From the NCBI GenBank assembly GCA_950097015.1, contig CATNEN010000031.1, forward strand, positions 3,286,001 through 3,350,000: a stretch of 64,000 nucleotides of DNA, given 5' to 3'. The position numbers and the translations under genes were made by a program. Positions 8,681 through 61,895 of the stretch are shown in pieces; positions within the stretch are counted from its first letter, which is position 1; each line of letters starts with the position of its first letter. Below the pieces are notes generated by a model. That model saw nothing but the letters and a program-made list of their open reading frames with translations, ran no database searches and had not been told where the DNA came from. This DNA comes from Macrostomum hystrix. Lineage: Eukaryota; Animalia; Platyhelminthes.

Positions 8681-8849
8681 GACTTGATTTGTCTAGACTT
8701 ACTGCGAAACTGCAATGACGTATAGTTCATTTTTAATGCTTTCTGATTAGTACTAGTAATGATAGTAAAAATGGCTCAATAAATGAGCCAGCGAGGCGAT
8801 TCTGTTCATTCTGCTTGCTGACTTCTGAACATCTGCGGCAGACACAAAA

Positions 8850-8970
8850 TCACCCAGGTGTGTTCATCTTCCCTGACTTCTTTATCGTCAAGCAGTGTAC
8901 ACCCTTGCTGTGCCTTGAGGTTTCGCTCTCAAAGGCGTAAATTGCACAACAAGCCCTCAAGCCTTCTTTC
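8850..8970 (-). mobile_element. SINE fragment, copy D
   Basis: CAGGTGTGTTCATC..CCCTGACTT and CTGTGCCTTG..AAGGCGTAAATTGCACAACAAGCC match 57414-57515. Confidence 0.5.
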
Positions 8971-11900
8971 TAATAAAATCGTATTATATGAATCAGTCTC
9001 GGGGGCTGGAAAACTGATTTATTCTGTCGAAAGTACAAGAAATTGGTGAAAAATATAAGCAAAACAGTCGCAGTAATGCTTTTAATTAAGCTTTATGAAA
9101 AAAACGGGCAAAAACACCTGGCCACAAGCACTCCGGATTGTCTAAAGGTAAGGATGTTTATTTCACCAGGGCACTACAAATGGACAGATCCACTTAATTA
9201 TTTCTGACTGCTGTGTGGGCTACAAGTAAAGGCAAGAACTTAGGTGTGTGTTGCAAAAACTGTAGCCTGGTATAAAAGTCGGTAGCCTTTTCTTGCCAGG
9301 TAGTAAACTAGCGGGTTCATAATTTATCCCTTAAAAAGCAACTATCCTTGAGGCAAACAGCAATAGTCTTTATGCTTAGATAGGAAAACCTGTGTAAACT
9401 TTTTTTTCGATTTGTTGGTACTCTACTCTAAGTAGCATAACCAAAACTATAAATACATGTCCTCACTTTACAACATCAGAATATCATACAACTTCCGCAA
9501 GTTCATTTCATGCTGGATTTTAATTGCTCTAGCTACTCATAATTCTCATGAAATAAGCAAGGAAAGGTAAGAAAATGGAGCTAATTGCTATTTGTGACGA
9601 ATTACTAAGTAATAAGAAAGCAAAAAAGTATACATATTTTCTGGGAAATGAAATTTTACTAGTTTAACTAGTTTTTAATAGTCTTAGTTGACAAAAAATA
9701 TCATATAATTTAGATAATTTACAGACTATACCATTGAAGAGACACACATTGTACATAAACTATTTGTAAATACATTTTTGTATATAAACAATTTGTTTAT
9801 TCCAAAAAAATGTTTTTTTTCAACTTTTTTCACCTAAATTTAATAATTTTTTTAAATCGAAAATTGTTCAGTCTCAAACATCAAATAAACAAAAAAATCA
9901 GCACCCAATCGGTGTGCACACCTCAAAAAATAATAATAATAGTACATAAACATGGTTCAGAAGCTATTCTGTGAAATATAGAAAAGGAATAGAAATCACA
10001 CATATCAAAATTTCTATTGTAGCTAATATATTGATACCAATAATATATATATATAATATATATATATATATGAACAGTAACATAATAGACAAATGAGAAA
10101 TTAAATTAGGCCTACTTGCATAAAGACCAAAATTTATTTCTGAAAAACTTAATCTTAAACTCTGACCTAGACTTTTCAGTCAAAAGAGATTAGAAGCTAT
10201 TGTCACTTTTAAGTAGCTAGCCACTTGTAAGGTCACATGACATATATGTGACTTGCTGTTGGCAGGTGATCATTAACTATAAATTTACTTAAAAGTTACT
10301 TAAGTTACTTAAAGTTACTTAAAAGTAACATGATTGTCAAATAAAATAGTTATAGGCCTAGCAAATAGCTAAGCTGACAATCTGCTTACTAACAGTTTTA
10401 GAAAGACCGAATTACAGTAAACAGCAAAAAACTTCTACAGTTTGCTAATAAGATAATGAGGCATTATAATCTGTAATCGTTAATGTAGCTATATAACCAA
10501 TTTTACCATGTTTTTTATGAAAACCAAGGGTTTTGCATATGAATATGATATGATTTATCACATGATATTACACATTTTTTTAATTTGCAAACGAACATTT
10601 TACAACACACTATTTCATCAAAGCCTACCACTTATTATACAACTATGCTGTTTGCAAATAGTTTTGGTGATTAGTTATGAAAGATTAGAGTATAAAAATG
10701 TAAGCTGGGTGTACATAATTTTTAGATGAGTAAATGAATATGAGTATAAGTAAGCTTTAGTGTAGCTTGATATTCTAAATTGAGACAGGATAGATAGATG
10801 CTTATCGAAGCCAGAAATGGTGTGGATTGTAATAAATACTCGTTAAGTTTCTACGAAAAATGAAAATTAAACAATGACACAACGCACATGATTTCTAACA
10901 GAACGAAGTAACGACTAGTTTTTTTCTGATATAGTGTCAAAAAAAGAAGCAAGAAATAAAACAATAAGGATAACCATGCAGATTCGGAGGTTTAGGAAAA
11001 AACAGTAGCCTTCGGCTTTTAACATCAAGGATTAGAGTTTTAATCATATAATACCAACGTTTTTATTTGCATCCAGGCTGAAGTCTGGATAAAAGTACAT
11101 GCATTTCTTGACCACAGATTACTATAATTCAGTATCAATTGTCGAAAGTTATTAACATTATAGTTATCATCGTATCTTTAATCTTGGCTAAAGCAATTCA
11201 TCAATCAGAAAAGAAATTATCAACGCTATTTCTTAGCTTACATTTCACCTTTACCCAGTTTCTTTTAATAGAAAAAACTTTCAAAATAATTTACAGACAT
11301 GAGACATGTTAGAATCGAGCTTCGAATAAAATCAATCTATGCAGTTTTGATGTTTTGTGCATACAATTTTCACACTTTTTGTATGATTTAACATGCAGCA
11401 GCCATTACATGCAGAGCGTTGAATGTAGAACCTCGATAGTCACCTCGCCGCTGAACACCCATTTTCCGGCCAAGTATGACTTGGCTGTCCCAAATTTACA
11501 CGGGGCAGATAGGCAACTCGGATGCAAGTTTTCTTGGAGAAAAACAACGGAATAACTTTGATTTTACTTTACCATTTTCATTGATGCAAAAGTGATCGTC
11601 TTTTTGTGCTACATACACACTTTAGGTATTTCTTTACGCTACTTGTAGTAGTAGTAAAAGATAGTAGAGCAACAACACTCCAACAAAGCTGTTGCAAGAT
11701 GACAATGTTTATTACCAATGGGGCCGCTATCCGTTTACTCCATAGAAAAGAAGGCCCGGAAAGGGATCGAGAAGAATTGTGGGAACTCCTCGTTTTTTAC
11801 TTTACTTTAAAGTAAAGGAAGGTGGTCGGTACTTTAAACTGACTTTTTAGTTTAAAGGTTAATTAAGTTTTTAAAAGTAATTTTTCCTTCTCAGCAGCAT

Positions 11901-12431
11901 AATTTGAAACATAATGACCTTGTAATAACCTTCGAATGAAAGATGGAAGATGGCATCTTCCAATTAGTTCTCATTATAGCTTCAGCTTAAGCTTACTTTA
12001 AACTTAAACTTACTTTAAATTTATATATAAATCTCCGGTATAACAGTCGATACTATACGCTATGGCCTTATTTTTTATACCACTCTCATATGCTATCTTA
12101 AGGCAGTCGTCTACACTCTCGTAAATACTCGGGGAAAACATGCATGACTTAAAAATCTGTTGATGCCCTTGTTATCATAGTTATCAGTTTGTGAAAAGCT
12201 CCAGTTTTTTTTGTTGCCAAATCGGACTGGAAAATCGAGTTAAGGGCTTGGTAGCTTATTACAAGGTCATTATGTTTCAATTATGCTGCTGAGAAGGAAA
12301 AATTACTTGACTGAAGATAGGCCAGTTCTCGTTCGCTTGCTCTTTGGGTCGTGGTTTCGTGGACCGAACTTTGGAAGGGAAAAATATATTGTTTGCTTCG
12401 CTCCATGTCTGGGTCGACAGGATTGAAGGGT

Positions 12432-12857
12432 GGGGCGGGGGCGGGGAGTGGCGGTCGGCCAGTGTAGAAATGTCACGCGGTCCATGTGTGATAGCAGGCG
12501 TCACTTCCGAAATTACCGACCACCGACCCCTCTCGTGTTTAAAACAAGTTGCGCTTTCGGATGCGAATTTCGGGCATGCGTGAACTCTGTGCATTGTGCA
12601 TGGTCACGAGGCCACGCCTCCTCGCGCAACCCACCGTACACTGCCATTTCTAATTCACGCCACGATGCATGCGCCCACCGCGTGAAAATGAAGCCTAGTC
12701 TTCGCTTGTTGTTGCTAATTTTAGCACAGGAAACCCACTCCGACCTTTAGGCATTTACCCAGGGCATGCGAGAGCCTGATGATTCCGCGGGAAGAGAACT
12801 TTATATAGCAAGCTTGGAGGGCCGCCGTGTCCTTAGACCAAGCGAAAAGCCACGCCC
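12432..12857 (+). promoter_or_regulatory. Proximal promoter of the KLF gene
   Basis: Tandem GC boxes at 12432-12446, GCGTCACTTCCG (CRE-half/ETS-like) at 12498-12509, TATATAG at 12802-12808 and CCACGCCC at 12850-12857, in a GC-rich island just upstream of ATG 12914. Confidence 0.55.
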
Positions 12858-12913
12858 CAAATTGTCCCACACTTTCGTAACAAGTTTTCAGCCTGCTAGA
12901 CAGATTCTCAAAA

Positions 12914-13960
12914 ATGGAACTGGACTGCGCTAGGGCTCTCTTGTCTCTGGCTCAACCAAAGGAGGATAAATCCTCTAGAACCGCACAAGAAGCTGCCGAA
13001 GCCGCCTATGACAATGAACTCTGCCGTCGATTGAAGTTCAAGCTGCATCGACTGGCTCGTCCCGAGCCGGTTGTGCAGCCCCAACCCAGCCCGACAGCTC
13101 TGGATGCCGAATCGGACAGCCGCCGCCGTCAGTTGGCTGCCACTATGTCGCTGATCCAGGACCGGCCGGCTCCTGTCCCGACCCAAGTTGCCGCAATGCC
13201 GATTCCATCGACAGCACCGCAACAGCTGCAGAAGCAACAGCAGCTGTTCACAGCGGTCCCATCGGGCAGATCGCTGCTATCCGAGCTACTGTTCGATCGC
13301 AAGCGCCAACAGGCCAGCTCGCCGGCCAGTAGCGACTGTCCGAGCCTCGGCTCCGCTGACCTGACCGACGAGTCTTCGGCTGATGCCACGTCAGCACCAG
13401 CTGCCAAGATCGCTCGGCGACAGTTGCAGCCGGATGGCGAGCCAGTGTCGGACCAGCTTGGCCCGGTCCAGGCCCTGCTAATTCCTATCGGCGCGCTGCA
13501 GAAGCCGCTGAATACACCAGTACAGGTAGTGCTGCTGCATTCCGCACCAGCGCAGCAACAGAAACTCGAGCAGCAGCAGAAACAGAGGCCGCCAATGCCG
13601 GTCGCTGCGTCAGTTCCCAACTCGGCAGCGCTAGTTCAGCGCGGCAAGGCGCACGCCTGCAACTATCCGGACTGCGGCAAGTCTTACTACAAAAGCTCGC
13701 ACCTGAAGGCTCACTATCGGTGCCACACAGGTGAGAAGCCCTACCACTGCGACTGGCCAGGCTGCGAGCGCGAGTTTGCCCGCTCTGACGAGCTCTCGCG
13801 TCATCGACGCGGCCACACCGGTGAGCGGCGCTTCCGTTGTGCCCGTTGCGATCGCCAGTTCAGCCGCAGCGATCATCTGGCCAAGCACGAGCGACGCCAC
13901 GACACCCGATCTGTTGACTCGCCTACTCAAAGTAGGCTTATATGCGAATTGCCAGACTAG
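12914..13960 (+). CDS. KLF10/11: Kruppel-like factor, KLF10/11 (TIEG/cabut) type, intronless, 348 aa
   Basis: Three C-terminal C2H2 fingers with TGEKP/TGERR linkers ([32 protein letters not shown]). The second finger is closest to KLF10/11. N-terminal [10 protein letters not shown] resembles a Sin3-interaction helix. Confidence 0.9.
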
Positions 13961-14649
13961 ACTAACCTAGATCCAAATAACAACTGTCTGGTGTGAGAAA
14001 TAATTCACACACCCTACGGCTCCATTTCGAGCCCGTCTTTCCGCATCCGGCGCCTCAGCTCCCGCTGTGCTTATAATTAGCTAATCTGTTTCCTTGCGTT
14101 TTTGTTACTGAGCTTATACGAGTACTTGAGACTTGAATATGGCTATATGCTTTTTAAATCTTCTCGTCTATTTGTATTTCTCTACTGTCGATGGAATGTT
14201 GTTTCGCGCACACCCACGCAAAGACATAATGCCCAGATGGCATTGTGAATATCATATACAGTTACATTGCCCTGTTCCCTGCATTTCATGTTCAACTACT
14301 GTCCAAGCACAATGAAAGGCGCTGTATAGATAAACATATTGCAGAATACTGTCATAATCATTTTGGGCCTGATCGTTGAAGTTGTAATATTCAATAGATA
14401 TGATATTTCAGATATACTTTTGTCAGTCTGTGCTGATGTGTACGGCTCTTGACTTTGCGGTTTCGCCGAGTTGTCTGTGTGTTCAGAAAATATATATTAA
14501 AAAAGTGTTCTTTGAATGAAGCGAAATCACATTTTGAACTTGTATTGTTAATCATTTGAAGTCTTCTGAATAAAAATCAAAATGGTTTCGGAAATTGGTA
14601 AAAGTAAAAATACTCTGACTTTGCCAGTTGTACTGAATCCTCGAAGTTA

Positions 14650-17600
14650 TATCAGCTCAAACTCTCGACTCAAACTAGAATATGCTAATCGAAAATAGAA
14701 TAGACTCAAACCAGAATATGCTAATCGAAAATAGAATAGACTCAAACCAGAATATTCTGATTGAGAATGGAATCGACTCCAACCAGAACATTCCAATCGA
14801 GAATGGAATCGACTCAGACAAGAACATTCCAATCGAGAATGGAATCGACTCAGACAAGAACATTCCAATCGAGAATGGAATCGACTCAGACAAGAACATT
14901 CCAATCGAGAATGGAATCGACTCCAACCAGAACATTCCAATCGAGAATGGAATCGGCTCCAACCAGAATACTCTAATTAAGAATGGAATCGACTCAAACC
15001 TGAATATTCTGATCGAGAATGTAATCGACTCCAACCAGAATATTCTGATTGAGAATGGAATCGACTCAAACCAGAACATTCCAATCGAGAATGGAATCGA
15101 ATCCAACCAGAACATTCCAATCGAGAATGGAATCGGCTCCAACCAGAATATTCTGATCGAGAATGGAATCGACTCAAACCAAAATATTGCAATTCAGAAT
15201 GGAATCGACTCAAACCAGAATATTGCAATTCAGAATGGAATCTACTCAAACCAGAATATTCTTATCGAGAATGGAATCGACTCAAACCAGAATATTCTGA
15301 TCGAGAATGGAATCGACTCAAACCAAAATATTGCAATTCAGAATGGAATCGACTCAAACCAGAATATTCTGATCGAGAATGGAATCGACTCAAACCAGAA
15401 TATTGCAATTCAGAATGGAATCTACTCAAACCAGAATATTGCAATTCAGAATGGAATCTACTCAAACCAGAATATTCTTATCGAGAATGGAATCGACTCA
15501 AACCAGAATATTCTGATCGAGAATGGAATCGACTCAAAACCAGAATATTCTGATCGAGAATGGAATCGACTCAAACCAAAATATTGCAATTCAGAATGGA
15601 ATCGACTCAAACCAGAATATTCTTATCGAGAATGGAATCGACTCAAACAAGAATATTCTTATCGAGAATGGAATCGACTCCAACCATAACATTCCAATCG
15701 AGAATGGAATCGACTCAAACCAGAATATTCTTATCGAGAATGGAATCGACTCAAACAAGAATATTCTTATCGAGAATGGAATCGACTCCAACCATAACAT
15801 TCCAATCGAGAATGGAATCGACTCAGACAAGAACATTCCAATCGAGAATGGAATCGACTCCAACCAGAATACTCTAATTAAGAATGGAATCGACTCAAAC
15901 CTGAATATTCTGATCGAGAATGTAATCGACTCCAACCAGAACATTCCAATCGAGAATGGAATCGGCTCCAACCAGAACATTCCAATCGAGAATGGAATCG
16001 ACTCCAACCAGAACATTCCAATCGAGAATGGAATCGGCTCCAACCAGAATATTCTGATCGAGAATGGAATCGACTCAAACCAAAATATTGCAATTCAGAA
16101 TGGAATCGACTCAAGCCTAAATATTGCAATTCAGAATGGAGTCGACTCAAAACCAGAATATTGCAATTCAGAATGGAATCGACTCAAGCCTAAATATTGC
16201 AATTCAGAATGGAATCGACTCAAACCAAAATATTGCAATTCAGAATGGAATCGACTCAAACCAAAATATTGCAATTCAGAATGGAATCGACTCAAACCAA
16301 AATATTGCAATTCAGAATGGAATCGACTCAAACCAAAATATTGCAATTCAGAATGGAATCGACTCAAACCAAAATATTGCAATTCAGAATGGAATCGACT
16401 CAAACCAGAATATTGCAATTCAGAATGGAATCGACTCAAACCAGAATATTCTGATCGAGAATGGAATCGACTCCAACCATAACATTCCAATCGAGAATGG
16501 AATCGACTCAGACAAGAACATTCCAATCGAGAATGGAATCGACTCCAACCAGAACATTCCAATCGAGAATGGAATCGGCTCCAACCAGAATATTCTGATC
16601 GAGAATGGAATCGACTCAAACCAAAATATTGCAATTCAGAATGGAATCGACTCAAGCCTAAATATTGCAATTCAGAATGGAATCGACTCAAACCAGAATA
16701 TTCTGATCGAGAATGGAATCGACTCAAACCAGAATATTGCAATTCAGAATGGAATCGACTCAAACCAAAATATTGCAATTCAGAATGGAATCGACTCAAA
16801 CCAGAACATTCCAATCGAGAATGGAATCGACTCCAACCAGAATACTCTAATTGAGAATGGAATCGACTCCAACCAGAATACTCTAATTAAGAATGGAATC
16901 GACTCAAACCAGAATATTCTTATCGAGAATGGAATCGACTCCAACCAGAATACTCTAATTAAGAATGGAATCGACTCAAACCAGAATATTCTTATCGAGA
17001 ATGGAATCGACTCAAACCAGAATATTCTGATCGAGAATGGAATCGACTCAAACAAGAATATTCTTATCGAGAATGGAGTCGACTCAAACCAGAATATTCT
17101 GATCGAGAATGGAATCGACTCCAACCAGAATATTCTGATCGAGAATGGAGTCGACTCAAACCAGAATATTCTGATCGAGAATGGAATCGACTCCAACCAG
17201 AATATTCTGATCGAGAATGGAATCGACTCAAACCAGAATATTCTGATCGAGAATGGAATCGACTCCAACCAGAATACTCTAATTAAGAATGGAGTCGACT
17301 CAAACCAGAATATTCTGATCGAGAATGGAATCGACTCAAACCAGAATATTCTGATCGAGAATGGAATCGACTCCAACCAGAATATTCTGATCGAGAATGG
17401 AATCGACTCCAACCAGAATACTCTAATTAAGAATGGAGTCGACTCAAACCAGAATATTCTGATCGAGAATGGAATCGACTCCAACCAGAATACTCTAATT
17501 AAGAATGGAGTCGACTCAAACCAGAATATTCTGATCGAGAATGGAATCGACTCAAACCAGAATATTCTGATCGAGAATGGAATCGACTCAAACCAGAATA

Positions 17601-17870
17601 TTCTGATCGAGAATGGAATCGACTCAAACCAGAATACTCTAATTAAGAATGGAGTCGACTCAAACCAGAATATTCTGATCGAGAATGGAATCGACTCCAA
17701 CCAGAATACTCTAATTAAGAATGCAGTCGACTCAAACCAGAATATTCTGATCGAGAATGGAATCGACTCAAACCAGAATATTGCAATTCAGAATGGAATC
17801 TACTTAAACCAGAATATTAATTCTTAACGAGAATAGATAATCGACTCAAACAAGAATATTCTGATCAAGA
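14650..17870. repeat. Minisatellite, 36-bp unit GAGAATGGAATCGACTCAAACCAGAATATTCTGATC (~88 units, several variant types)
   Basis: 36-bp period, giving the 12-aa repeat in the ORF track. Starts just after the putative KLF polyA signal (AATAAA ~14568). Confidence 0.95.
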
Positions 17871-18140
17871 GTTTCTTTGCTGGAAATTGAAGAATGGAAT
17901 GAAAAGTCTACAATAAGACTACAATTGTAATATGATTTTCTTTCTGCAATGAAAGTGCCAGAAATATCACATTATGAATAGAAGGCCAAGTAATTCAGTT
18001 GCATTTGCAATATAAAAAGCTATTTTGTTTTCCTGCTTGAGAAGCTGTTCTGCTTTAGCTTAGAGTCCGGCTCACTGTTCCAGCACAGCCGTAGCCATCG
18101 GCTCATGCACTACTCAGCTCTCTAGTAGCCACGCTGAGCA

Positions 18141-18178
18141 CACGTGCGAGGCACGCGCTGCCTGCGTGATTTTCGCGC
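18141..18178. promoter_or_regulatory. E-box plus E2F-like motif in an intergenic GC-rich patch
   Basis: CACGTG at 18141-18146 and TTTCGCGC at 18171-18178. Motif match only. Confidence 0.2.
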
Positions 18179-21100
18179 CAGTCAGTGAGGGAGAGACATT
18201 AGAAGGGGAGCGCACCAGCCCTAGGAATGAAAAAGAACAAAGTAGAGTTCAAATTGATAAGAAATTGAACAGGGGGCTCCTTTTATTTCTTACGAAGGTG
18301 AAATTTTCGCTTCATGACCCATTGGTCCGGGTAGATTTTTATCTCTGCATTTTAAATTATATATAGTTTATGAAGGGTATTCGCTTCACTCTGTGTGAGT
18401 ATGCCTTTGCTTAAAATAATGATTGCCTGTATAATGTGACTTTAAAGCAGACGGTAGATTATACAGTAAGGTAAGTATTTTTTCAGCTGGGTGTGTAACA
18501 ACAAGTTCGCAATAATAATGGCTTGGACGGTCGGTCCAACTGACAGGGCCACACGGCGTGCGCGTGATCACTTCTAAATTTAGCCTCGCCTCACGGGCGG
18601 CGCACTTTAACCGCTCTAACGAGGCATAAAGGCTATTTAGGCTACTGAGTAAGTAGGAGTGACAGAGTCGTTATCTTTTGTTTTTGAAAAAAAATTGTTT
18701 TAATTGATAACACGCTGCATAAACTAACAAAAGTGCTAACAGAAAAAGAACTCTAAAATTAATCAACAGAATACAAAGGACAATAGAAAGAGATTCTGCA
18801 CGCAAAATAAAATTTAGACAAAAAAGAACTTTAAATCATGTAAAAGTCCATTAAAATTCTGTCGTTACGCTCGTATGGACGGATTTCAAAACACTGAAAA
18901 ATCCGATGTGGCTGCATCCAACAAGGAACACTAGAAGAAGAAGGACGGACACTTCGTCTCATGGAAAATGTCTTGCATGCAAAAAAAGTTATAGTCATTT
19001 TTGTGTGAAAAAAGTGAAAGTTTCCTATCTCGCTAGTGCATTTAATTTTTTTTTCGTGAAATCTACCTTTAATAATTTTTCCAAGAAAGGAAGTGTGGTC
19101 CTTCTTCCAGTGGTCCTAGCCATCCAACTGGAGGCAAGCTGCTTGCTAATGTCTGAATCGAGGCCGTCCTAAACATTAGGTAATTATTAAACGTGTGATT
19201 CAATCTGAAATTATCAGAAACATCGGCCCAGACTGCCGTCTAAGTGGGACATGCCGTGCTCAATGAAAAATGCAAACATTTCTAAAGAAAGGACAAGTCA
19301 ACTATTTAAAAACATCGGAACTTGGACAATTTCGAAATAAAGTCAGTGAACAGACCTTAGGTGAAGAAAACTGAAAATATTGACTGAATGCCATTGTTTT
19401 CAGTTCAAATGACACCCAGCAGAATCTATAGACGGTGAATCCGATTTTGTAAATAGACTGCAAAGCCTAAATTTACAACTATCCAGGAAATTAACTTCAC
19501 CCCAAAACGGCTTTTAAAGATTCATGTTAGTCTTGTGAGAGATACAATTCAGACTACTGACAACAGTAGAAAAGCAAAGACTTGGCTGCAAAACTCTCAC
19601 ATAACACAAAAAAATATCGCCATAAAAATGGCAGGCTTAAAAGAGACTTCTGTGCACACTGAGAGTGGTGGGAGAGGACTGCGTGTGGCTATGGCTGACT
19701 GACGAAGGCAAACAAGCCGGGAACCGGAGGTTCGTTCCCCACTTTTAGTGTGTTACAAGGCTAGTATTTAGATTTAAGCTAATTGGACTTAACGACTAGG
19801 CATGCAGACTATAATTGTGGATTCCAAGAAAGTCGGAGAGGCTCGAGCTTTTCTTGCCATCCATAAACAAAGACTGCAGTCGTAGGAAGACCACTGGGGG
19901 TATTTCAAATACCTACATTTTACTCAGACCCAAAATGTTCAACCAATCGCCATGGAAATCCAGAACACGGACTAAAATTTTCCGCTTTATCCGATGAAAC
20001 AACTTCCAGAAGGCACCGTCGAGATCGAGATAATGCTGGTGCCCATTTTGAATGAATGAAGTGAAACACTACAGCGTAATACCTTGCTGAAGAACGCAAT
20101 TAACTGGCTTTTTGGCTGAGATTTGAACTCCTGACATCTCTGCCGACCCCTTCTTGGGTTTTAGGTTTGACCATTCTATGGGTCTGACACCCTAACAACC
20201 AATAAACACCCAAAAAAACCCATAAACACCCAATAAACACCCCACAAAACACCCCATAAACACATGCAATGGCCGCATTCGTCATATATTATATTGGCCA
20301 TAATGGAAAGTTAGCAGAGCCGAGCGTGTGTGCCCTAGTTTGCTTCTTGATTTGTCTATGGTACAGGAACTGTGCCCTTTGAGTCGTTCATAATCCAATG
20401 AAATTCAAGGAGATAATGAGTACAAAAAGAGACAACTTTTATAATGAGAAAATGTACTTCATGTAACTAGGTATAAAATGAGAACAATGAGAACTAAGAA
20501 AACACAGTTTTTAGACATGGCGTTTAGTATTAATTAATTTAAATTAGTAGAATATTTGTTATGCTTCCCTGCATTATCACTCATTTGATAGTACCAAAAA
20601 GGAATATTTAAATTTTAAACTGTCGCTCACTGGAAGTCAGATTAGGTTATCTGATAGGTTAGGTTAGGTTATTACGATATTCTGATTCGCTGTCAAATCT
20701 ACCGACCAATCAGGTATCCGGGTACAGTTCAGTTTAAAATTACTTAAAACTGCTTCTGCAGCATCAATTTTTGCCACAGTACAGTCCACTTCGAATTCTT
20801 AGAAATGTAAGTAAAATTTTTTTTGCATACTTTTTTTGGTAAATTTATATTCGTGTTCGCCATATATAGCCTTCAGGGCCTATTTCCACTTACGATTCAA
20901 TAGCGCAGTTGGAAAGTACTTTTCGAGAAATTTCTCCTGAGCGAACCCGCTCCACTTGTAAACAGCGAACTAGAGAACATATGTTTTGCTATTATGTTTT
21001 ACACCCTTGATTGGCTTGCTGTCGACTTCATTTTTGCGTGATGGAGATCAAAGCGAGGCTAAATAAGAAAATAGCGTGTGAACTTGAAGCAATTTTTAAT

Positions 21101-21414
21101 CAAACACTTGGCCTAATTTCCTGGCCTGGGAATCATGCAGCGAGAGCAGCTCAGTAAATCGATTGGTACGGATGAAGCCCGAGGCTTCCGCTACTCCCGT
21201 GATGGGCATCTGTCCCCGGGATCCGAGGAACAAAAGGGATCGTTATTTTTTTAAGAAAATACGACTCATCTCCGTTTTGTTGGCTATCAAATCACTATCA
21301 ATTTCGATTCATGATATCTGATTGTCTTGAGTCTTGACTTAACTCAATCGCATGGTTTATTTGGTTCATGATGAAAATTAGATTGTTAAGGGGACACCTG
21401 GACTCAGTTGGTGA

Positions 21415-21454
21415 GCTTACTTACTTACTTACTTACTTACTCACTTACTTACTC

Positions 21455-21543
<89 letters not shown>

Positions 21544-21560
21544 TTTACTTACTTACTCAC
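21415..21560. repeat. (TTAC)n microsatellite
   Basis: ~35 tetranucleotide units with a few TCAC/TTAT variants. Confidence 0.95.
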
Positions 21561-21589
21561 AACGCCAGTTCCGCAGCCATCGGCTTACG

Positions 21590-24500
21590 ATGTCCAGCAA
21601 TGTGTCGAGTCCCGGCGCCAACACGTCAGCTTCCTGTGTACACCACCTGACCAACCAGAATACCCAGCTGTTCGACCTACAGCCGCTGCTCCGGTTCTAT
21701 CAGTGCCGCAATCAGGGCGCATTCGCCCGTCGCGTCCTGGAGGAGGCGGAGCGCGAGGGCCTGCAGGAGCTGCACCGGATGCGCCTGCCCCTGCTGACTG
21801 CCTTCGTCTGCCTCATGGCGTTTGGCGCGGCTGGCAATGCGCTGCTTATCTGCGCAGTGTCCAGGCGGCCCGGCATGCGAACAATGACTAACCTGCTGGT
21901 GCTCAACCTGGCCGTGTCCGACTTTTTCTTGTGCACCGTCACTCAGCCATGCAACGTGCGGCGACTGCTGTTTCCCGAGCGAGGCTGGGAGACCGGCCTG
22001 GCGCTGTGCAAGATTGTCAACGGACTCACCGGACTCAACTTGTTTGTGTCCACCTTCTCAGTGGCTGCCATTGCTGTCGACAGATGCAGGGTAAGCACTC
22101 CAGCGAAGGTTGAAAACTTTCAAGAGCGCCTTACCTCTCTGATTAACAGTAGAAAGACCACGCAATTCCCCCTGGACAAAGACCACAGGGCTATTTCAAA
22201 TACCCGCTGCCTACTTCACGCCAGCTCCCAAACCGAATGACCGATTTTCGTGAAAGTTCACCATATAGATAAAAAAATATCTTCCTTTTCGACGAACTAA
22301 CTTCCTATGCCGTCCGACGCCTTGACTTGACTTTACTTGACTTGACTGAAGTTGCACATTCCGCTAATTCCTGAAAAGCCCGCTTCAGCGGATGATGCGG
22401 GGCCAGTCAAGGAGGTCCGTGGCCGGTCCTAGCGTATTGCTCACTAGGGAAGAAGGATGCTCGTCTGGTAACCCTGAGGAACCGGACAAGCCGTGAGATG
22501 TTCTCGGATCTGCAAGCGTCGTCCTTGGATGGGTTCGGTCAAGGTGAGTTAGCCTTGTCTTATTAATAAAAGGGCATTGACAGACGAAGTGCAAGGCATC
22601 CTCGTTCTCGAGCATCCAGTATCGACACAGCTCGTCCCTAAGGTCTCCCCGGAGGAAGCAGTGCCTCCTGGCATAGCAGCCATGGCCTGTGAGGGTCATG
22701 GTGAGGGCTCGTATGCCTTTCCGCGTTTGGTTCAGGAGGAAGATCCGAAGTCGGGTGGGTGGAACCGGGCCTGCCACTTTGGATTAGTTGCCCAGTTATT
22801 AATCTGGCTATTAATGACAGTATTGGGGGTCGGGGCTGAGTCAGGCCTGTTTTGTTAGAGTCAGCAAGCTCGTTTCCAGGAAAACCAGAAGGCCCTGGAA
22901 TACATTGGAGGGCAGCAACGCCAGCCGTCCGACGCCATCATCGCCGAGATATTCAGCGATTCTTGTCGAAGATCCTGGTGACAAGGTCAAATAACATTTC
23001 TCTCTATATAAGGGCGGGCTCCCTTAGTTCAGCGTCAGCAGCAAGATTTAAACTCGTGCGCACATTTTTTTCAAAGGGCTTATAAATAAATTGTCCATTA
23101 CCACTAATATATTTTTACCCGTATAATATTCTTTAATTAATTTAAAATGCAGTCAAAATTGATGTGGAGTTTGGAAAAAATTCTCACTTTGCTTGCTAGA
23201 TGTGCCTAAAATGCTAGGCTGAAGCGAGGGTTGGCCATAGACTATAACGCATTTTTGCTTTTCAGTCTCAGATTGCTAGAAAAATGTCTTACTTGGCTAT
23301 AAAAATATACTGTAATTAAATCACGATATCTCTTGTAGATGGTCTCGTCCATAGACATTTATCTACTAAAAGCGAGCATTAAACGACTCGGGGTTGCTCA
23401 TCGGCCAATGTATTCAATGCAAATAGGCTGCTTAACAGAAACGGTCGAGGCGCGAAGCCGTCAATTTCACTGATTAAATTGGCAAGCAAAGGGTGCGAAC
23501 AATACATACCATCACGTGAACAAAACCCATGGGTTGTTAATTTAGATAATGCAGGCAGTTTAGCAAAATGTAGCAAATAATGAACAGCTGTAATATGGAT
23601 TTTTATTCATGCAGGTAAAGAAAATGAAAGGAAGGGAACACTAAGAAACTGATTGGCTATTAAAATTAAAAATAAATTGCGAAATTCCTCTGCTGTTTTA
23701 AAAAGTATGCAGCCCACGGTGCTGCACTGACAAAGCCAAAGACAATGACAAAGAAATGGGCGGAACCTGTTTTGTTATATAAGCTTTCATTGAACATTTT
23801 CTGAGCAAAATTCTGCTTAAAGATGATGGATTAGACGCCATAGAGTCAAAATCGATGTGTTATTTTAAATCACTTACAATTCAACATATGACTTATGTGA
23901 CTTAAAGTGAAATCAATATGCAACTTCCATAATCATTACCATTGCTTCATGGGTGAGTGACAGGGCGGTCTAATGCGTTTGCCTCTCGCACCGAGGTCCC
24001 TGAGCTCGATTCCGTGGCGAGTTCATTTTTATTTGAGGCGCAGCCGCGAAGAGAAGGCTGAGAGGTTTTTCGTGCAATTTGAGCCTTTGAGGGCCAACCA
24101 ACAAAGCACAAGTAGAAGTGTTCGCTGATTGACGATGAGAAAGTCAATGCAGATGAACACAGCTTTGTGAGCGTGTGCTCAGGAGTCAGCTGAATAGACA
24201 GAATTGCCTCTTCGCTGGCTGCGGGTGCACTCCTGCAATTATTATTATTGTTTCCTTGCTTCAGGTGGTGCTTCAGCTGGCACCGATGAACGGCAGCCAG
24301 CAGGCGGGCCGGCGGGGTCGTCTGATCCTGCCAGCTATCTGGCTAGTAGCCGCTGCCGCTGCCAGCCCGCTGCTCTGGTTCGCCGAGCTGGCCGACGACG
24401 CCACCTGGCTGAGCGGCGGCCGGAGACAGGTGTGCGCCGAGAAAGCCGGCAGCTCGGTGGATCGGGCCCTGAAGCTGGCCTACAGCGTTGGCAGCATCTG

Positions 24501-30418: not shown

Positions 30419-31689
30419 TTAACCGCCGATCAATATCATTGGTCGGTTCTTGAGCTTGGACAGCGTCTCCATTCCTGCAACAGATTAGTGGAATGAGAAT
30501 TATTAACTAAGGGCACAAACATCGAGGTATTGCACTAAAAGCCTGGATTGTCCGAATCTTTTAACTCACCAGCATGTTGAGCCTTTTTGCGCTGCAATGC
30601 ATCAGCCACAATCTGCTTGAGCTCCAGGTCAGAGGCTCCGGAACGCATAGCGTCGCGCAAGCTGACCTCGCTGCCGCCGTGAAGACACACTTTGAAGTTG
30701 CCATCAGCAGTGACGCGTACTCGATTGCAGACAGCGCAAAAGTGTTGAGTCATGCTAGAGATAAAGCCAACGCGACCTCGAGCACCCGGCACGCGCCACG
30801 CTTTGGACACGTGATTTGGTTCGTCTGGCAGTCTTTCCAAATTAGGAAATTCAGTCCTAATGCGGTCAAGCATCTCGGCATAGGGTAGCATCTTTCCTGT
30901 GCTCCATCGATTGCCGTCAAACGGCATGTATTCAATAAAGCGCACATCGTAAGCATGGTCTAGCGTTAGACGAACAAAGTCTACTAATTCGTCGTCGTTG
31001 AAGCCACGCATAGCTACGCAGTTGATCTTCACAGTTGGAAAGCCGCTGTCTAGAGCGTGACGGACTCCGGACCAGACCCGATCCCAGCCGCGTCGCCGGG
31101 TGACCAATTCGAACTTAGCTGGCACGAGGGTGTCGCAGCTAACGTTCAAAGCGTCTAGACCGGCCTGTCGTAGAGCTCTGGCATGTCGCTGCAACAATAT
31201 ACCATTAGTAGTTAGGCCGATCGACTGCAGGCCGTATGGTCTCAACTCATTTAGACCAGCCACAATGTCTAGCAAGTCAGAACGCAGCAGTGGTTCGCCG
31301 CCAGTTAGTCGCACCTTGCGCACACCCCATCCAACAAAGGCGCGGGCTAAACGCGAAATTTCGGAGCTTGTTAGTAGAGATTTGGAAGCCGTCAGAGGCA
31401 CACCTTCTGCTGGCATGCAATACTGGCCTACGGGACAAGGAATACAATTATAAGTTACTTATTTGATGATTGCTGCATTTGAGAATTTTCGGATAACAAA
31501 ATGCTTACATCGCAAATTGCACTTCTCAACTAGTGAAATACGCAAATAAGTATGACGTCGCTTAAACTTGTCGGTAAGAGGATCGCTATTGTCAGCCAAA
31601 GGTCTTTCCTGTTGCATCTGAGTTGTATTGGCCACTACAGAGTACATTCGACGCGAAATTGCACAAGCCGCACTCTTAGAAAGCGCCAT
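30419..31689 (-). CDS. MOCS1: Molybdenum cofactor biosynthesis GTP 3',8-cyclase (MOCS1A/MoaA), 3 exons, ~364 aa
   Basis: Exons are 31689-31509, 31427-30570 and 30474-30419 (GT-AG, 1095 nt in frame). The radical-SAM motif CNLRC|QYC spans intron 1. Also present: LTGGEP, the second cluster CAVCNR..KVC, and C-terminal KNRPMILIGG-stop. The N-terminus is basic and Ser/Ala-rich, like a mitochondrial presequence. Confidence 0.93.
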
Positions 31690-32169
31690 TGCAGCTGAAA
31701 AAAGAATAAATTGATTTAGCATTTAAATTTGCATTCAACAAGTTCTGGACATTTAGTATAACTATAGCTCATTTAAAAACAGACACAAATATTCAAGGCA
31801 AGGCGCACCTATACATCTGCTAAAAGTGAAGTCTGAAAGTCTTCTATGAACTATGATAGAAGTATCCAAAACAGAACAAGCTCACAAAGCAATTAAACAT
31901 AAGATCATATCCAATAAGTTTGCTATAATATATGATAGCTAAGACTTAGCTAATTAAAATTTTGAGTAACAAAAAAAACAAAATACAGAGCAAACTTTGT
32001 TATACTTTACATTTAATTGCTAATGTACCACTCAAAATGAAATTAAAATTGTCATTAAAGTTGAATTTATTGAAATGAGGTTATTTAAACAGTGCAGTAA
32101 ATTCCGCATAGTCTTACTGCATTATAAGGTTTGTTAAACAGTGTAGTTTTTAAACATGTTATAAACAGT

Positions 32170-45500: not shown

Positions 45501-47961
45501 AGCGTTGTCAGCGGCACCAAGAAGGCTTCGGGCTGGCGCGGAAACGGAGGCGGCGACGTCGTCTGATGCGGCGCCTTCGAGTTGGCGGCACGTTGTTTGC
45601 ATTATAAAAAAATACCAAAGTTAATTAAACTTGCTATCCTAGGCTACTGCTAGTAGATATTAGGGAAATGTACATTTTTCAAGCTAATTACAGTAACGAC
45701 ATGAATTGTGTCTGATACGTTGCCCGTTCGAATAATAAAAACGCTATAAATTAATTAATAAAAGTAACCTCACCACAATCGGTCGCGAGCCCTGTTTGTA
45801 AGGCTGTTGCTGCTGCTGCTGCTGCTGCGGCTGCTTTCTGGTGCTCCTAGAAGATGGTGGCGCCTCGTCCACATCGGCATCGTCCATTCCCCACCAGTCG
45901 GGCTGCCCATAGAGCTCTGGTTCCAAAATTATGAGAAAATGATTACCACGTCTGCCACTATATATTTTCAAAATCTTTTTAGATCCAAAGCGATTTAGTG
46001 CGCGATTTTCATATTTTTTCCTTTATTCTTGCGCACCTTTTATCTTCTTCTGGTCGACGCTTCTTGAACAGGCTCTGCCAGAGTGAGTTCGCGCCGAGGT
46101 AAGCAAAGCACCAGCGGCACAGCCCTGCACGGAGTTTGTTTCTAGATAATTATTCCTTGAATGCGAATGCAAAGATAGACGAGGCCAGCAAACAGGTCAT
46201 TACTGCAGGCAACCAGTGGACAACATTTAAGTGAAAAAACTGGACAGAATGAACTCAGAAATAACAAAACAAAGTTTAGAGTGCCGCTAAGATTAGTACA
46301 CTTGTCTATTCTTACTGTGAAAGTAACGTGCCGTTAAAAAACATTCAGGGGTTGCTTGTCTAGACGAACCATAATGGGTGCAGTTGGCAAGGGAGAAAGT
46401 GAGGGGTGTAAAGTCCATTTAAGGTTGTAAGATAGACAGGAAATGAGGTGGATGCATTGGGTAAAGGGATAAATGAGACAGGCCGGAGCGAGGTGGGTGC
46501 AGTGGTTATGCGGGTAAGAGAGACAAGGAGTGAGGTGGGTGCAGTGGATGAGGGGAAAAATTAGACAGGGAGTGGGGTGGGTAAGGCGGTTAATGGGGCG
46601 TGAAGAGTCAGTGCAGGACAGGCTGGTGGTCAAGCCAAGCAATGCGAGACTCATCAGTAGGTGATTTAGGGGTAGGCAGTGAGCAGACGATCTGTGCTCA
46701 GGGAGGCTGTTAAACAAACCTTGCAATAGACTCATAGTCCATTAAAATAACGTCGACTGCTCAGCACTATAAGGAATAGGGCAACGTTTTAGCTTTTAAA
46801 CAACTAAGTAAGCGCTAAAAAAGATTCGATAATTTCACAGAAACAAGACTGCAATTAAAGCAAAATGTAAGTGAATGATCCCCTTGCAGATCCCACCAGC
46901 TCACTGGACACTCGGAGCTCTGTGGTAGCCGACTCCGCTGCCACCGGCCGCGTTCCACTGGCCTGGTGGAGGCGGCCTTCGCCGCCCAGGCCGGCGGGTC
47001 GGGCAACTCCAGCCGCTGAGTGGAGGCGGCGAACCTGGCCACCCGGAGTCCGGCTGGCTCCCGGCCGAAACGCAAACTGTCGTCGGCCTCCAGGACGGCG
47101 CCGGAAGTCGCGTCGTTGCCAGCCGATTCATTACCAATCCGGCGATTGTTGACAAATGTCTGCGTAGGTTTTCGGTTGGTCGAAAAAGGCAAGACGTAAA
47201 AGAAGAAAAAAACATCTCTCCCCTGTCTCATCTCTCCCCTGTCTCATCTCTCCCCTGTCTCATCTCTCACCTGTCTCAACTCTCCCGTCTCAACTCTCCC
47301 CTGTCTCAACTCTCCCCTGTCTCAACTCTCCCCTGTCTCATCTCTCCCCTGTCTCATCTCTCTCCTGTCTCATCTCTCCCCTGTCTTATCTCTCTCCTGT
47401 CAATCTGGCCAGCATTTTCTATTTTAAAGTTTTGATCTTTTTGGCTCGCGTTGCATATCAGGTTGCTGACCCCCTGAAAAGGTACATGGCTCTACCAGTC
47501 GGCGGGTGTCTGACTGATAAGCGAGTCGCGGAACACCGAATCGCTCACCCCCTCAGCTGAGCCCAGGTCTTTCAGTCGGTGGCGCTGCAGGCTGGGATCA
47601 AAGGTCACCAGGGCGTGCCTGGGTTCAACAGTTGCCGACTGCAATTGCAAGGGTTCCGAATCGGGACATCAGGAACGTATGAGCTTCGCATAGGAGCCCA
47701 AGAATGAAAGTGGAGAAAAATCTAAATATTGAACTCGCAAACTCGATTGCAAAAATCTCCAATAAAACATTTTTATGACATCTATGGGACAGTACATACA
47801 CTAATCAAAGTTCAAACCTTTATCTGCAATTGGCAGTCTGAGCGACCAATCAGAAACGTGCCATCCTGCGACAGCCAGTATCTGCCTCCCTGGGAGTCGA
47901 CCAGGCACCAGACCGTTTGGTCGGCCGTCTCACTTGCTGATGAGGCCAGCAAGCCAGCTTC
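36517..47961 (-). CDS. CEP170: CEP170/CEP170B-like centrosomal protein with N-terminal FHA domain (multi-exon; middle exons incompletely resolved; no genomic ATG found for the first exon)
   Basis: Phase-consistent exons: 47961-47818, 47638-47549, 47159-46905, 46124-46037, 45916-45774, 45562 (or 45574)-45045, 44950-44725, 38209-37838, 37562-37220, 36707-36517. Candidate extra exons at 41107-41052 and 39224-39129 are uncertain. FHA motifs: WCLVDSQG, LIGRSDC, HAL..LKDLGS.EG|TFVN..LRFG. Family motifs: LYGQPDWWG, FPRQPEAF, SEAGTYTI, DTSGLLRDT. Confidence 0.8.
36817..36988. mobile_element. MITE-like hairpin in the last CEP170 intron
   Basis: 63-bp inverted arms (36817-36879 and 36926-36988) with 3 mismatches and a 46-bp spacer. 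Confidence 0.7.
38280..39080. repeat. Minisatellite, 28-bp unit GCTTCGATTCCATTAGCTTGGATCTCTA (~28 units), CEP170 intron
   Basis: Period 28 (38289 to 38317). Confidence 0.95.
39820..40850. repeat. Pyrimidine-rich minisatellite, ~17-bp unit CTCTGTCACTCTCTCTC
   Basis: Direct inspection; 17-aa period per 3 units in the ORF track. Confidence 0.95.
41295..43325. repeat. Purine-rich minisatellite, 23-bp unit GGAGAGAGTGACGAGAGACAGAA (~88 units)
   Basis: Direct inspection; variants GAAG/GAAC/GATG. Confidence 0.95.
43790..44120. repeat. ~16-bp minisatellite TCTCATCTCTCCC(C/G)TG; second array of the same family at 47215-47400
   Basis: Same unit and orientation in two different CEP170 introns. Confidence 0.85.
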
Positions 47962-49274
47962 CTGAATAGTTACAGTAATATCCCGTTGTAGCCTACTGCT
48001 GTCAGTTTATATTTATGAAACATTTAATAATGCTCAAAATTGTCATATATGTACTTAGGTCTTGATTATAAATAAGTTTTCAGAACTTGTTTATCATCGT
48101 TAACTAATTAAATATTTTCTGGACATACAAACAGAAATAAAAAGTATGCAAAACATTTTTTTGATTTCCTTATAATGGTTTAATAATGTCAAAATAATTT
48201 TTTTTGTTAAATTTTATGTGTTATTTATTACAACTTGAATAATACAAACTTTAATTTTTCGTCTTTTGCGATTGAATTAACTATCAAAATGTACCCTTGG
48301 ATTGTATTTCATGAATGGACCGCTATTATGTTACAGAAGAATATGTGGACGCAGCTTTGCGTATATAATTAAAATATTAATGTCATATTTTACACAGTGA
48401 AAACGTTGCTGTGAGAATTTTAATGCAAGTTCTTTTTATTTTGCTGCACTAAACCATAAAAATCATTCCGTTTTTATGCGCAAAATAAAAAGTATTTATA
48501 TATATATAAACAATATTCATGAGCGCTATAAATTAAATGAACGCAGGAAACAAAAAATGATTATAAGTTATGTTTCTAGCTAACTATCTATATAGGGCCG
48601 ATGGGCATTTTTGTGAGAATTGAGTTCTAATCGGTACAATAGAACATAAAAAAACATGACATAACAGTTCAAGTCAGATTTAATATCTGGTAGTCTGTAA
48701 AAACATCTTTAGGGATTCATGAATTATTAGCTTAACTAGGTCTTAATATCGTTGTTGCATAGCGCTTTTTAATTAGTTTTAATTGCTCATATCTTTAAGC
48801 AAAATTCAAGCAAAAAGACACACTTTGTTATAATCCAAAAAGAGACGGATTGTCGTCCTTTATTAGTAGGTTGCATAAACCTAGATCGAGTAAATGTTCA
48901 AGCATAAATTCGAGCTTAAAACGAGTTAACTCATAAAAAACTTTTAGCTTATCAATAAAGCCATATCTTTTATTTAAACTACTTACTATTGCATTGTTGA
49001 GTGTATATAAGTTAGTTAACTGAGAGTTGCATGTTAATTAGACAGGCAAAGAATTTTCAATCAATAAGTGAACAATAATTATCGAACGACTTTATGTAAA
49101 GTACGAGAATAAGAAATGTTGGCAAAAAATTCGCAGAAAATATTTTTATCAACGTTGGTGTTAACATCGTGCACATTACGATTCGCTGGAGAACGCGGCA
49201 GTACTACGAGTATTTAGTAGACAGCTAAGGGTGTGTTCTGGAGCTGTACTAAAATGTACAACAGTTTTTTATTT

Positions 49275-61895
<12,621 letters not shown>

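What the first reader, a model, noticed from the sequence alone, without database searches (positions are those of the whole stretch)
47818..49275. CEP170 FHA exon has no genomic start codon: candidate for a spliced-leader-donated AUG in a RasGRP-CEP170 dicistron
Seen: the first CEP170 exon starts at an acceptor (TATTCAG|GAA GCT GGC, 47961) in phase 0 and contains no in-frame Met. An in-frame TAA lies 14 codons upstream. The next in-frame Met comes after the FHA domain. The 1.3-kb gap to the RasGRP stop is AT-rich, and the one GTAAGT donor I noticed there (48986) would give ATG CAA TA|G, a stop. Established: flatworm spliced leaders end in a conserved AUG that can serve as initiator in Schistosoma. 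Inference: trans-splicing here gives ...AUG|GAA GCU, an exactly in-frame MEAGLLASS N-terminus, and CEP170 is the downstream cistron of RasGRP.
Basis: partly seen in the sequence, partly recalled or inferred. Interest (0 to 1): 0.75.

Follow-up and report, generated by a model that had tools for sequence, protein, structure and literature searches.

The report
Spliced leader likely supplies start codon
In this Macrostomum flatworm a CEP170-like centrosome gene has no start codon of its own and most likely takes it from the AUG that ends the trans-spliced leader, a mechanism known in flatworms since 2006. The added idea that it shares one transcript with the neighbouring RasGRP gene is not supported.

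Summary
On the minus strand a CEP170-like FHA gene begins at an AG acceptor (exon 47961-47818, phase 0). The genome carries at least 23 exact copies of the 35-nt Macrostomum lignano spliced leader, which ends ATG|GTAAG. Joined at 47961, that ATG reads M-EAGLLASS in frame.

Spliced RNA contigs from three public runs match exons 1-3 without a mismatch. They leave the genome exactly at the acceptor and carry 22 more letters that fit nowhere in 46500-52000. The tool did not print those letters, so the leader junction is strongly indicated but not read.

In M. lignano the orthologue has a Met where this genome has CTG (Leu5), so a genomic start codon seems to have been lost here.

The dicistron half is unsupported. 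The gap is 1117-1313 nt, unique and repeat-free, has no RNA contig, and exceeds the published 1-kb operon cut-off.

This scan has already confirmed the same mechanism for other genes of this genome (CHMP6, NF-YB, MRM2). I read this as a new member of a known kind.

The parts
47962..47976 (-). 3' splice acceptor region (actgtaactattcag|); TTCAG matches 5 of 6 positions of the M. lignano trans-splice acceptor motif [T/C]TNCAG
   Evidence: motif from PMC8629364
47818..47961 (-). First coding exon of the CEP170-like FHA gene: 48 codons, phase 0, no Met. RNA contigs match it with 0 mismatches and leave the genome at its 5' edge
47947..47949 (-). CTG (Leu5) that aligns with Met547 of the M. lignano orthologue model; probable site of a lost genomic start codon
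   Evidence: the RNA contigs confirm the base calls
48007..48009 (-). In-frame TAA, the 16th codon upstream of the exon; no ATG between it and the exon
47549..47638 (-). Exon 2 (30 codons, FHA core, no Met); intron 1 GT..AG confirmed by contigs
46905..47159 (-). Exon 3 (85 codons, no Met); intron 2 confirmed by contigs; the 3' boundary is ambiguous by one base
47962..49078 (-). AT-rich spacer: an outron, or intergenic DNA plus promoter. Unique in the genome, with no tandem repeat of note, no Rfam hit and no RNA contig in X2-X4
49079..49444 (-). Last exon of the RasGRP-like gene: coding to TAG 49277-49275, with RNA contigs reaching 49079; CATAAA at 49096-49091
49353..49361 (-). In-frame donor-like CAG|GTGACC inside the RasGRP last exon. 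A cis-splice to 47961 would give an in-frame fusion, but no contig shows it

Best explanation
The CEP170-like gene is transcribed with a non-coding 5' outron. That outron is removed when the roughly 35-nt Macrostomum spliced leader is trans-spliced onto the acceptor at 47961. The leader ends in AUG and the exon starts in phase 0, so the mature mRNA reads ...UUGC AUG|GAA GCU GGC. The leader's only AUG is then the 5'-most AUG and the initiator, giving M-EAGLLASS followed by the FHA domain. The genomic start codon still seen in M. lignano (Met aligned with Leu5, CTG) has been lost here, and the in-frame leader AUG four codons upstream takes its place. What is shown: the anatomy, SL genes ending in ATG, the frame, and spliced RNA that leaves the genome at the acceptor. 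What is inferred: that the 22 extra contig letters are the leader, and that translation starts at its AUG. The pre-mRNA most likely has its own promoter in the 1.1-kb AT-rich spacer rather than being the tail of the RasGRP transcript.
For: (1) The exact 35-nt leader published for M. lignano (PMC8629364) occurs at least 23 times in G000, with 149 matches at up to 3 mismatches and 0 for the reversed control. The gene reads ...ttattgcATG|gtaagacacc. It folds into three hairpins with an Sm-like AUAUUUUUAG, z = -3.9.
(2) Leader plus exon 1 translates as M-EAGLL... in frame. The leader has one ATG and no in-frame stop.
(3) No in-frame ATG lies between the TAA at 48009 and codon 163. The best solved relative, the human CEP170 FHA domain (4JON, E 7e-13 via the M. 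lignano orthologue), starts at residue 5 of its chain, so the start codon must lie just upstream of the conserved W.
(4) In each of runs X2, X3 and X4, one 713-nt contig covers exons 3, 2 and 1 across GT..AG introns with 0-1 mismatch. It aligns to 47962 and then carries 22 letters that fit nothing in 46500-52000. Matching through 47962 means the letter next to the exon is G, as in AUG.
(5) 23 leader letters is what a k=31 assembly graph should keep if another trans-spliced mRNA shares the first 7 exon letters. This follows from log4 of 7,000-22,000 acceptor sites being about 6.4-7.2. This point is my inference.
(6) The contig ends at the same place in all three runs.
(7) No contig lies in 47992-49078 in X2-X4.
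(8) A leader AUG used as initiator is established in flatworms (Cheng et al. 2006, as cited in PMC9851317 and PMC12582326) and is suspected in Macrostomum (PMC10468722).
Against: The 22 letters were not printed, because the loose-ends table was truncated. Their identity as leader is therefore inferred. Contigs cannot show absence of a rare cis-spliced isoform. No protein from this species with an M-EAGLL N-terminus was found in the protein collections. No translation data exist. The acceptor matches the published trans-splice motif at only 5 of 6 positions.
Confidence: 0.8

Rival explanations
1. RasGRP and the CEP170-like gene form an operon (dicistron). One promoter upstream of RasGRP makes a polycistronic precursor, and leader trans-splicing at 47961 frees the downstream cistron. 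It is compatible with a leader-donated AUG and rivals only the own-promoter part of my explanation.
For: The two genes are adjacent on the same strand. The downstream gene is probably trans-spliced. The adjacency is conserved in M. lignano, where one gene model (UniProt A0A1I8HEX7) even fuses the two. About 15% of M. lignano genes are assigned to operons (PMC8629364).
Against: The spacer is 1117 nt from the last RNA-supported RasGRP base, or 1313 nt from the stop. It is unique in the genome and free of repeats. It therefore fails the 1-kb repeat-adjusted cut-off and lies far from the ~100-bp mode. No RNA contig covers the spacer in three runs. At 28.9% GC the spacer looks like ordinary intergenic or promoter DNA.
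Confidence: 0.15
2. A conventional cis-spliced 5' exon with its own in-frame ATG is joined to 47961. It would lie in the spacer or farther upstream, and the 22 extra contig letters would be that exon.
For: Thirteen ATG...|GT phase-0 mini-exons can be drawn in the spacer. The candidates with donors at 48455 (three alternative ATG starts) and 48295 end in G, as the contig requires. An earlier case in this genome turned out to have a tiny upstream ATG exon (note s1-316733).
Against: Nine of the 13 candidates end in a letter other than G and are excluded by the alignment running through 47962. The remaining donors (GTTTAG, GTACAT) are far from GT[G/A]AG. The bins holding them have zero depth, and no joint was reported although joints with 23-letter sides were listed. 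A unique exon gives no reason for contigs from three runs to end after the same 22 letters.
Confidence: 0.07
3. The acceptor at 47961 is used in cis from an in-frame donor inside the last RasGRP exon (CAG|GTGACC at 49359/49358). This would give a RasGRP-CEP170 fusion protein, as in the M. lignano model A0A1I8HEX7, either as the main product or as a minor isoform.
For: The donor-like site is in phase 0 and would join in frame. The M. lignano model has such a fusion...RLHNQVT|GGCMASS.... Sharing of acceptors between cis- and trans-splicing is reported in parasitic flatworms (PMC12582326).
Against: RasGRP contigs in X2, X3 and X4 run unspliced through that site to 49079-49154. No joint from 49358 to 47962 was listed. 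A fusion should leave about 29 upstream letters in a k=31 contig, not 23 (my inference). The A0A1I8... model is a genome-based prediction, and merged models are the expected artefact when the downstream gene lacks an ATG.
Confidence: 0.05
4. Translation starts at a non-AUG codon (UUG Leu4 or CUG Leu5), or at the first downstream Met, without any contribution from the leader.
For: CTG at 47949-47947 sits where M. lignano has ATG.
Against: If the leader is attached, its AUG is the first AUG and is in frame. The first downstream Met lies beyond codon 163, so starting there would delete the whole FHA domain.
Confidence: 0.03

Closest known systems
[quoted passage not shown]
   Same: The leader ends in AUG directly before the GU donor. 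The recipient exon starts in phase 0 at an AG acceptor. The conserved ORF has no genomic AUG. So the leader both caps the mRNA and supplies codon 1.
   Different: This is a free-living macrostomorphan, not a parasite, and a different gene (CEP170-like). The evidence here is contig-level RNA and comparative sequence, not cDNA cloning or translation assays. A congener keeps a genomic Met five codons into the exon, which suggests a recent loss.
Macrostomum lignano SL trans-splicing (Ustyantsev and Berezikov 2021, PMC8629364; Wiberg et al. 2023, PMC10468722)
   Same: The 35-nt leader is identical, with a GTAAG donor and a three-hairpin SL RNA. The acceptor is of the TNCAG type. About 20-30% of genes are trans-spliced. 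The 2023 paper notes that the final ATG is probably a start codon.
   Different: Those papers do not list genes that depend on the leader AUG. This genome is a congener, not M. lignano (46-97% protein identity to the M. lignano model).
SL-resolved operons of M. lignano and C. elegans
   Same: Same-strand neighbours, with the downstream gene (probably) trans-spliced.
   Different: The spacer is 1.1-1.3 kb of unique DNA, against a mode of about 100 bp. No precursor RNA was seen.
Human CEP170 (FHA domain structure 4JON)
   Same: An FHA domain starts within a few residues of the N-terminus. It is the best solved match (E 7e-13 through the M. lignano orthologue). A LYGQPDWWG-type motif lies downstream (45744-45971); its likeness to the human protein is from my memory.
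   Different: No Pfam CEP170 C-terminal domain was detected. The sequence is highly diverged outside the FHA domain.

Membership tests
mRNA whose initiator AUG is donated by the flatworm spliced leader | The organism has SL RNA genes whose leader ends in AUG immediately before the GU donor | tested here: met
   At least 23 exact copies of the leader, reading ...GCATG|GTAAG, with a three-hairpin fold and an Sm-like site. A second variant in 5S repeats also ends ATG|GTAAG.
mRNA whose initiator AUG is donated by the flatworm spliced leader | Leader sequence seen joined to the acceptor in RNA | tested here: inconclusive
   Contigs of three runs leave the genome at 47962 and carry 22 unplaced letters. 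The adjacent letter is G and the length fits a leader. The letters themselves were not printed.
mRNA whose initiator AUG is donated by the flatworm spliced leader | The leader AUG is in frame with the conserved ORF | tested here: met
   Leader plus exon 1 reads M-EAGLL... through the FHA domain.
mRNA whose initiator AUG is donated by the flatworm spliced leader | No genomic in-frame AUG is available upstream of the conserved domain | tested here: met
   The TAA at 48009-48007 is followed by no ATG through codon 163. The RNA contigs confirm the bases.
mRNA whose initiator AUG is donated by the flatworm spliced leader | Translation actually initiates at the leader AUG | not testable with these tools
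   Needs Ribo-seq, N-terminal proteomics or a reporter assay.
SL-resolved operon (dicistron) | Short intercistronic distance (mode ~100 bp; no more than 1 kb after subtracting repeats in M. lignano) | tested here: not met
   The distance is 1117 nt from the last RNA-supported base and 1313 nt from the stop. The spacer is unique in the genome and has only a 28-nt tandem repeat (criterion).
SL-resolved operon (dicistron) | Precursor RNA spanning both genes | tested here: inconclusive
   No contig lies in 47992-49078 in X2-X4, but contigs drop rare molecules.
SL-resolved operon (dicistron) | No promoter between the genes | not testable with these tools
   Needs CAGE or chromatin data.
CEP170 family | FHA domain at the extreme N-terminus, closest to the CEP170 FHA | tested here: met
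   Pfam FHA on exon 2, just under the gathering score (E 1e-3, 20.0 bits against 20.7), and on the orthologue (1.6e-7). The best PDB match is 4JON, CEP170, at 7e-13.
CEP170 family | CEP170 C-terminal domain | tested here: not met
   No Pfam hit on the C-terminal ORFs or on P0003 and P0007. I therefore call the gene 'CEP170-like'.
RasGRP | RasGEF domain, EF-hands and C1 domain in that order | tested here: met
   Seen in the window exons and in the collinear M. lignano model (RasGEF 1e-45, EF-hand, C1 1e-15).

The most novel reading that the evidence does not exclude
The acceptor at 47961 is shared between leader trans-splicing and cis-splicing from an in-frame donor in the last RasGRP exon. Under this reading the locus makes both a stand-alone CEP170-like protein that starts on the leader AUG and a RasGRP-CEP170 fusion protein. 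The conserved adjacency and the fused M. lignano model would then reflect a real conjoined gene or long-spacer operon rather than an annotation artefact.
Probability: 0.08. Interest if true: 0.55.

Novelty: new member of a known kind. Interest (0 to 1): 0.3.

Why it matters
Gene finders that demand a genomic ATG will mis-annotate genes like this one. They may truncate it, losing the FHA domain, or merge it with its neighbour, as seems to have happened in the M. lignano model A0A1I8HEX7.

The comparison with M. lignano (Met against CTG at the same position) offers a small, concrete picture of how a gene comes to depend on the leader. Once an in-frame leader AUG sits a few codons upstream, the gene's own start codon can decay.

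The mechanism itself has been known since 2006, and this scan has already confirmed several other cases in this genome. The value is therefore in annotation and in counting such genes, not in a new principle.

Tried and rejected
1. I tried to read the 22 extra contig letters. The single read-laying run truncated its loose-ends table ('286 more are not shown') and no second call is allowed.

2. I tried to reach the contig through its protein, and four searches failed:
- A word search with the 138-aa ORF holding exon 3 was blank.
- An exhaustive HMMER search with exon 1 gave no near-identical protein; the best hit was 54% identical.
- Two searches with the M. lignano model's CEP170 half returned only itself or nothing.
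- The look-up of encoding contigs has no record of P0003.

3. Exons were handled one by one, by reference.

4. The sigma-70 promoter/terminator scan of the spacer is meaningless for a eukaryote and was not used.

5. An Rfam scan of the spacer found nothing, and the tandem-repeat scan found one 28-nt repeat.

6. I considered whether the similarity between the translated intron upstream of the acceptor (SRLQRDITV) and the M. lignano RasGRP tail (TRLHNQVT) means anything. I rejected it, because the true RasGRP exon aligns far better.

Full report
**What is there**

All relevant features lie on the minus strand. A RasGRP-like gene (RasGEF, EF-hands, C1) ends with TAG at 49277-49275. After a 1313-nt stretch of 28.9% GC comes an AG acceptor, actattcag|GAA GCT GGC, with the first exon base at 47961.

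The exon (47961-47818) is 144 nt and in phase 0. It encodes a 48-residue peptide, EAGLLASS...CQLQIK, with no Met. Read upstream in the same frame, there is a TAA at 48009-48007.

**Gene identity**

- Exon 2 carries the FHA core, just under Pfam's cut-off (PF00498, E 1e-3, 20.0 bits against a gathering score of 20.7).
- The only informative relative found is the Macrostomum lignano UniProt model A0A1I8HEX7 (P0003).
- The FHA region of that model has human CEP170 (PDB 4JON) as its best solved match, at E 7e-13. The alignment starts at residue 5 of the human chain.
- In this family the FHA domain thus begins almost at the N-terminus, so the initiator must lie just upstream of the conserved Trp at residue 18 of exon 1.
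- No CEP170 C-terminal Pfam domain was detected, so I call the gene CEP170-like.
- A paralogue elsewhere in the genome (C1:678660-678767, L008) has the same exon end but carries its own genomic ATG, which puts 56 extra residues upstream of the conserved Trp.

**Does the organism have an AUG-terminated leader?**

Earlier notes of this scan called the genome Macrostomum-like, and I tested this myself.

- The 35-nt leader published for M. lignano (PMC8629364) occurs at least 23 times exactly. There are 149 matches at up to 3 mismatches, against 0 for the reversed control.
- The exact copies lie mostly in tandem units of about 11.6 kb.
- The gene reads ...ttattgcATG|gtaagacacc. It folds into the canonical three hairpins with an Sm-like AUAUUUUUAG (z = -3.9).
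- The leader has a single ATG, at its very end, and no in-frame stop. Joined to 47961 it reads ATG GAA GCT, giving M-EAGLLASS in frame.

**RNA evidence**

That share is about what the exons alone would give.

I laid three of these runs and a fourth run, X1, on 46500-52000. Each of X2, X3 and X4 contains one 713-nt contig with these properties:
- It covers 46904-47159, 47549-47638 and 47818-47962 with 0-1 mismatch.
- It crosses two GT..AG introns, so it derives from RNA of this species.
- It confirms the bases, including CTG at 47949-47947, and the absence of Met in 163 codons.
- It then carries 22 further letters that were laid nowhere in 46500-52000.
- Its alignment runs one base past the acceptor, so the letter next to the exon is G, as in AUG.

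No contig of these runs lies in 47992-49078. The tool's loose-ends table was truncated, so I could not read the 22 letters. This is the main gap in the case.

**Why the 22 letters are probably the leader**

This section is my inference.

In a k=31 assembly graph, a contig that enters a shared leader must stop where another trans-spliced mRNA shares the same exon prefix. With 7,000-22,000 acceptor sites (PMC10468722, PMC8629364), the longest shared prefix is expected to be about log4(N), which is 6.4-7.2 letters. That leaves 30 - 7 = 23 leader letters, and 22 + G is what was observed, identically in three runs.

The alternatives fit less well:
- A unique cis exon gives no reason for such a fixed stop.
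- A cis-splice from the RasGRP exon should leave about 29 letters, and should have been listed as a joint. Joints with 23-letter sides were listed.
- Of the 13 ATG...|GT phase-0 mini-exons that can be drawn in the spacer, nine end in a letter other than G and are excluded.
- The other four (donors at 48455 and 48295) have GTTTAG or GTACAT rather than the GT[G/A]AG consensus. They also lie in bins of zero depth.

**Comparison with M. lignano**

P0003 aligns with exon 1 at 54% identity, and its Met547 sits opposite Leu5 (CTG) of the window. In local alignment this is GCMASS against GLLASS.

The congener thus keeps a genomic ATG five codons into the homologous exon. Here it is CTG, confirmed by RNA, and the in-frame leader AUG lies four codons upstream. 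The simplest reading is that the gene's own start codon decayed once the leader AUG could serve. The direction of that change is inferred from one protein alignment only.

P0003 itself is a fusion of RasGRP and the CEP170-like gene...RLHNQVT|GGCMASS.... It is a genome-based prediction. Merging is the expected artefact when the downstream gene looks start-less, but the model also shows that the adjacency is conserved.

**The dicistron claim**

RasGRP contigs run unspliced to 49079 (X3), 49118 (X4) and 49154 (X2), with CATAAA at 49096-49091. From 49079 to the acceptor is 1117 nt.

- The spacer is unique in the 220-Mb genome.
- It has only one 28-nt tandem repeat and no Rfam hit.
- It is not covered by RNA contigs.

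The published M. lignano criterion is 1 kb or less after subtracting repeats, with a mode near 100 bp. The pair fails that criterion, though narrowly.

Trans-splicing does not imply an operon, since most trans-spliced genes are monocistronic. I put the operon reading at about 0.15. An in-frame fusion through the donor-like CAG|GTGACC (49359/49358) is possible on paper, but no contig shows it.

**Comparison with what is known**

Use of the flatworm leader's 3'-terminal AUG as initiator was established for Schistosoma mansoni in 2006. [quoted passage not shown] All reported flatworm leaders end in ATG (PMC12582326). The Macrostomum genome paper remarks that the final ATG is probably a start codon (PMC10468722).

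This scan has already confirmed the same thing for CHMP6, NF-YB and MRM2 in this genome. The present case is a further member of a known kind.

**Verdict**

| Question | Result |
|---|---|
| Observation | Confirmed |
| Leader-donated AUG | Probable, about 0.8 |
| Dicistron | Unsupported |
| Interest | Modest; annotation value and a neat Met-to-CTG comparison |

Joined sequences were not sent to any search tool.

Noticed in passing
G000:C39:12667884-12685526 and beyond (L011 91-125, 431-549, 1358-1476): A second type of SL RNA gene. The leader differs at 3 positions (...GACTCTCTTTTTTGCATG|GTAAGACACCG) and is followed by hairpins and an Sm-like GUAUUUUUGAC. It is repeated at least 20 times with a ~927-bp period, and each unit also holds a 5S rRNA gene (Rfam 117.9 bits). 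Published M. lignano work describes a single leader. Whether the variant is expressed was not tested.
   Followed up: partly
L005 1838-2000 (G000:C15, and the ~11.6-kb arrays on C15, C17 and C42): The canonical SL RNA genes sit about 300 nt from a U1 snRNA gene (Rfam RF00003, 151.7 bits) inside tandem units of about 11.6 kb.
   Followed up: partly
G000, dispersed (for example C1:10196334, C8:3485170, C38:22441508): At least 15 dispersed copies of a leader-like 35-mer ending ATA instead of ATG (...TACGGCGAAGGCTCAATTTATTGCATA). They may be a retroposed or transposon-borne leader relic.
   Followed up: no
window 47213-47394 (intron 2 of the CEP170-like gene): RNA-contig word depth reaches 30,000-100,000, with many 'goes back' joints and GTCTCATCTCT-type loose ends. 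This points to an abundant, apparently transcribed short-unit satellite. Similar coding-looking microsatellite arrays fill 39.7-43.4 kb, 49.9-50.8 kb, 58.6-59.5 kb and 60.0-60.6 kb.
   Followed up: no
G000:C1:678660-678767 (L008 1342-1629): A paralogous CEP170-like FHA gene with the same exon-1 end, but with its own genomic ATG and a 56-residue acidic stretch ahead of the conserved Trp. It is the orthologue of M. lignano BOX15_Mlig006295g1 (P0007 and P0017).
   Followed up: partly
window 30535-31722, minus strand: ORFs that, from my memory of the family, resemble a MOCS1/MoaA-type radical-SAM molybdenum-cofactor enzyme (GGEPLLR... motif region). No family scan was run on them and they are unrelated to the finding.
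   Followed up: no
UniProt A0A1I8HEX7 (P0003), M. lignano: This public gene model fuses RasGRP and the CEP170-like gene into one 1147-aa protein named 'Ras guanyl-releasing protein 3'. It is probably a merged annotation caused by the downstream gene's dependence on the leader.
   Followed up: partly
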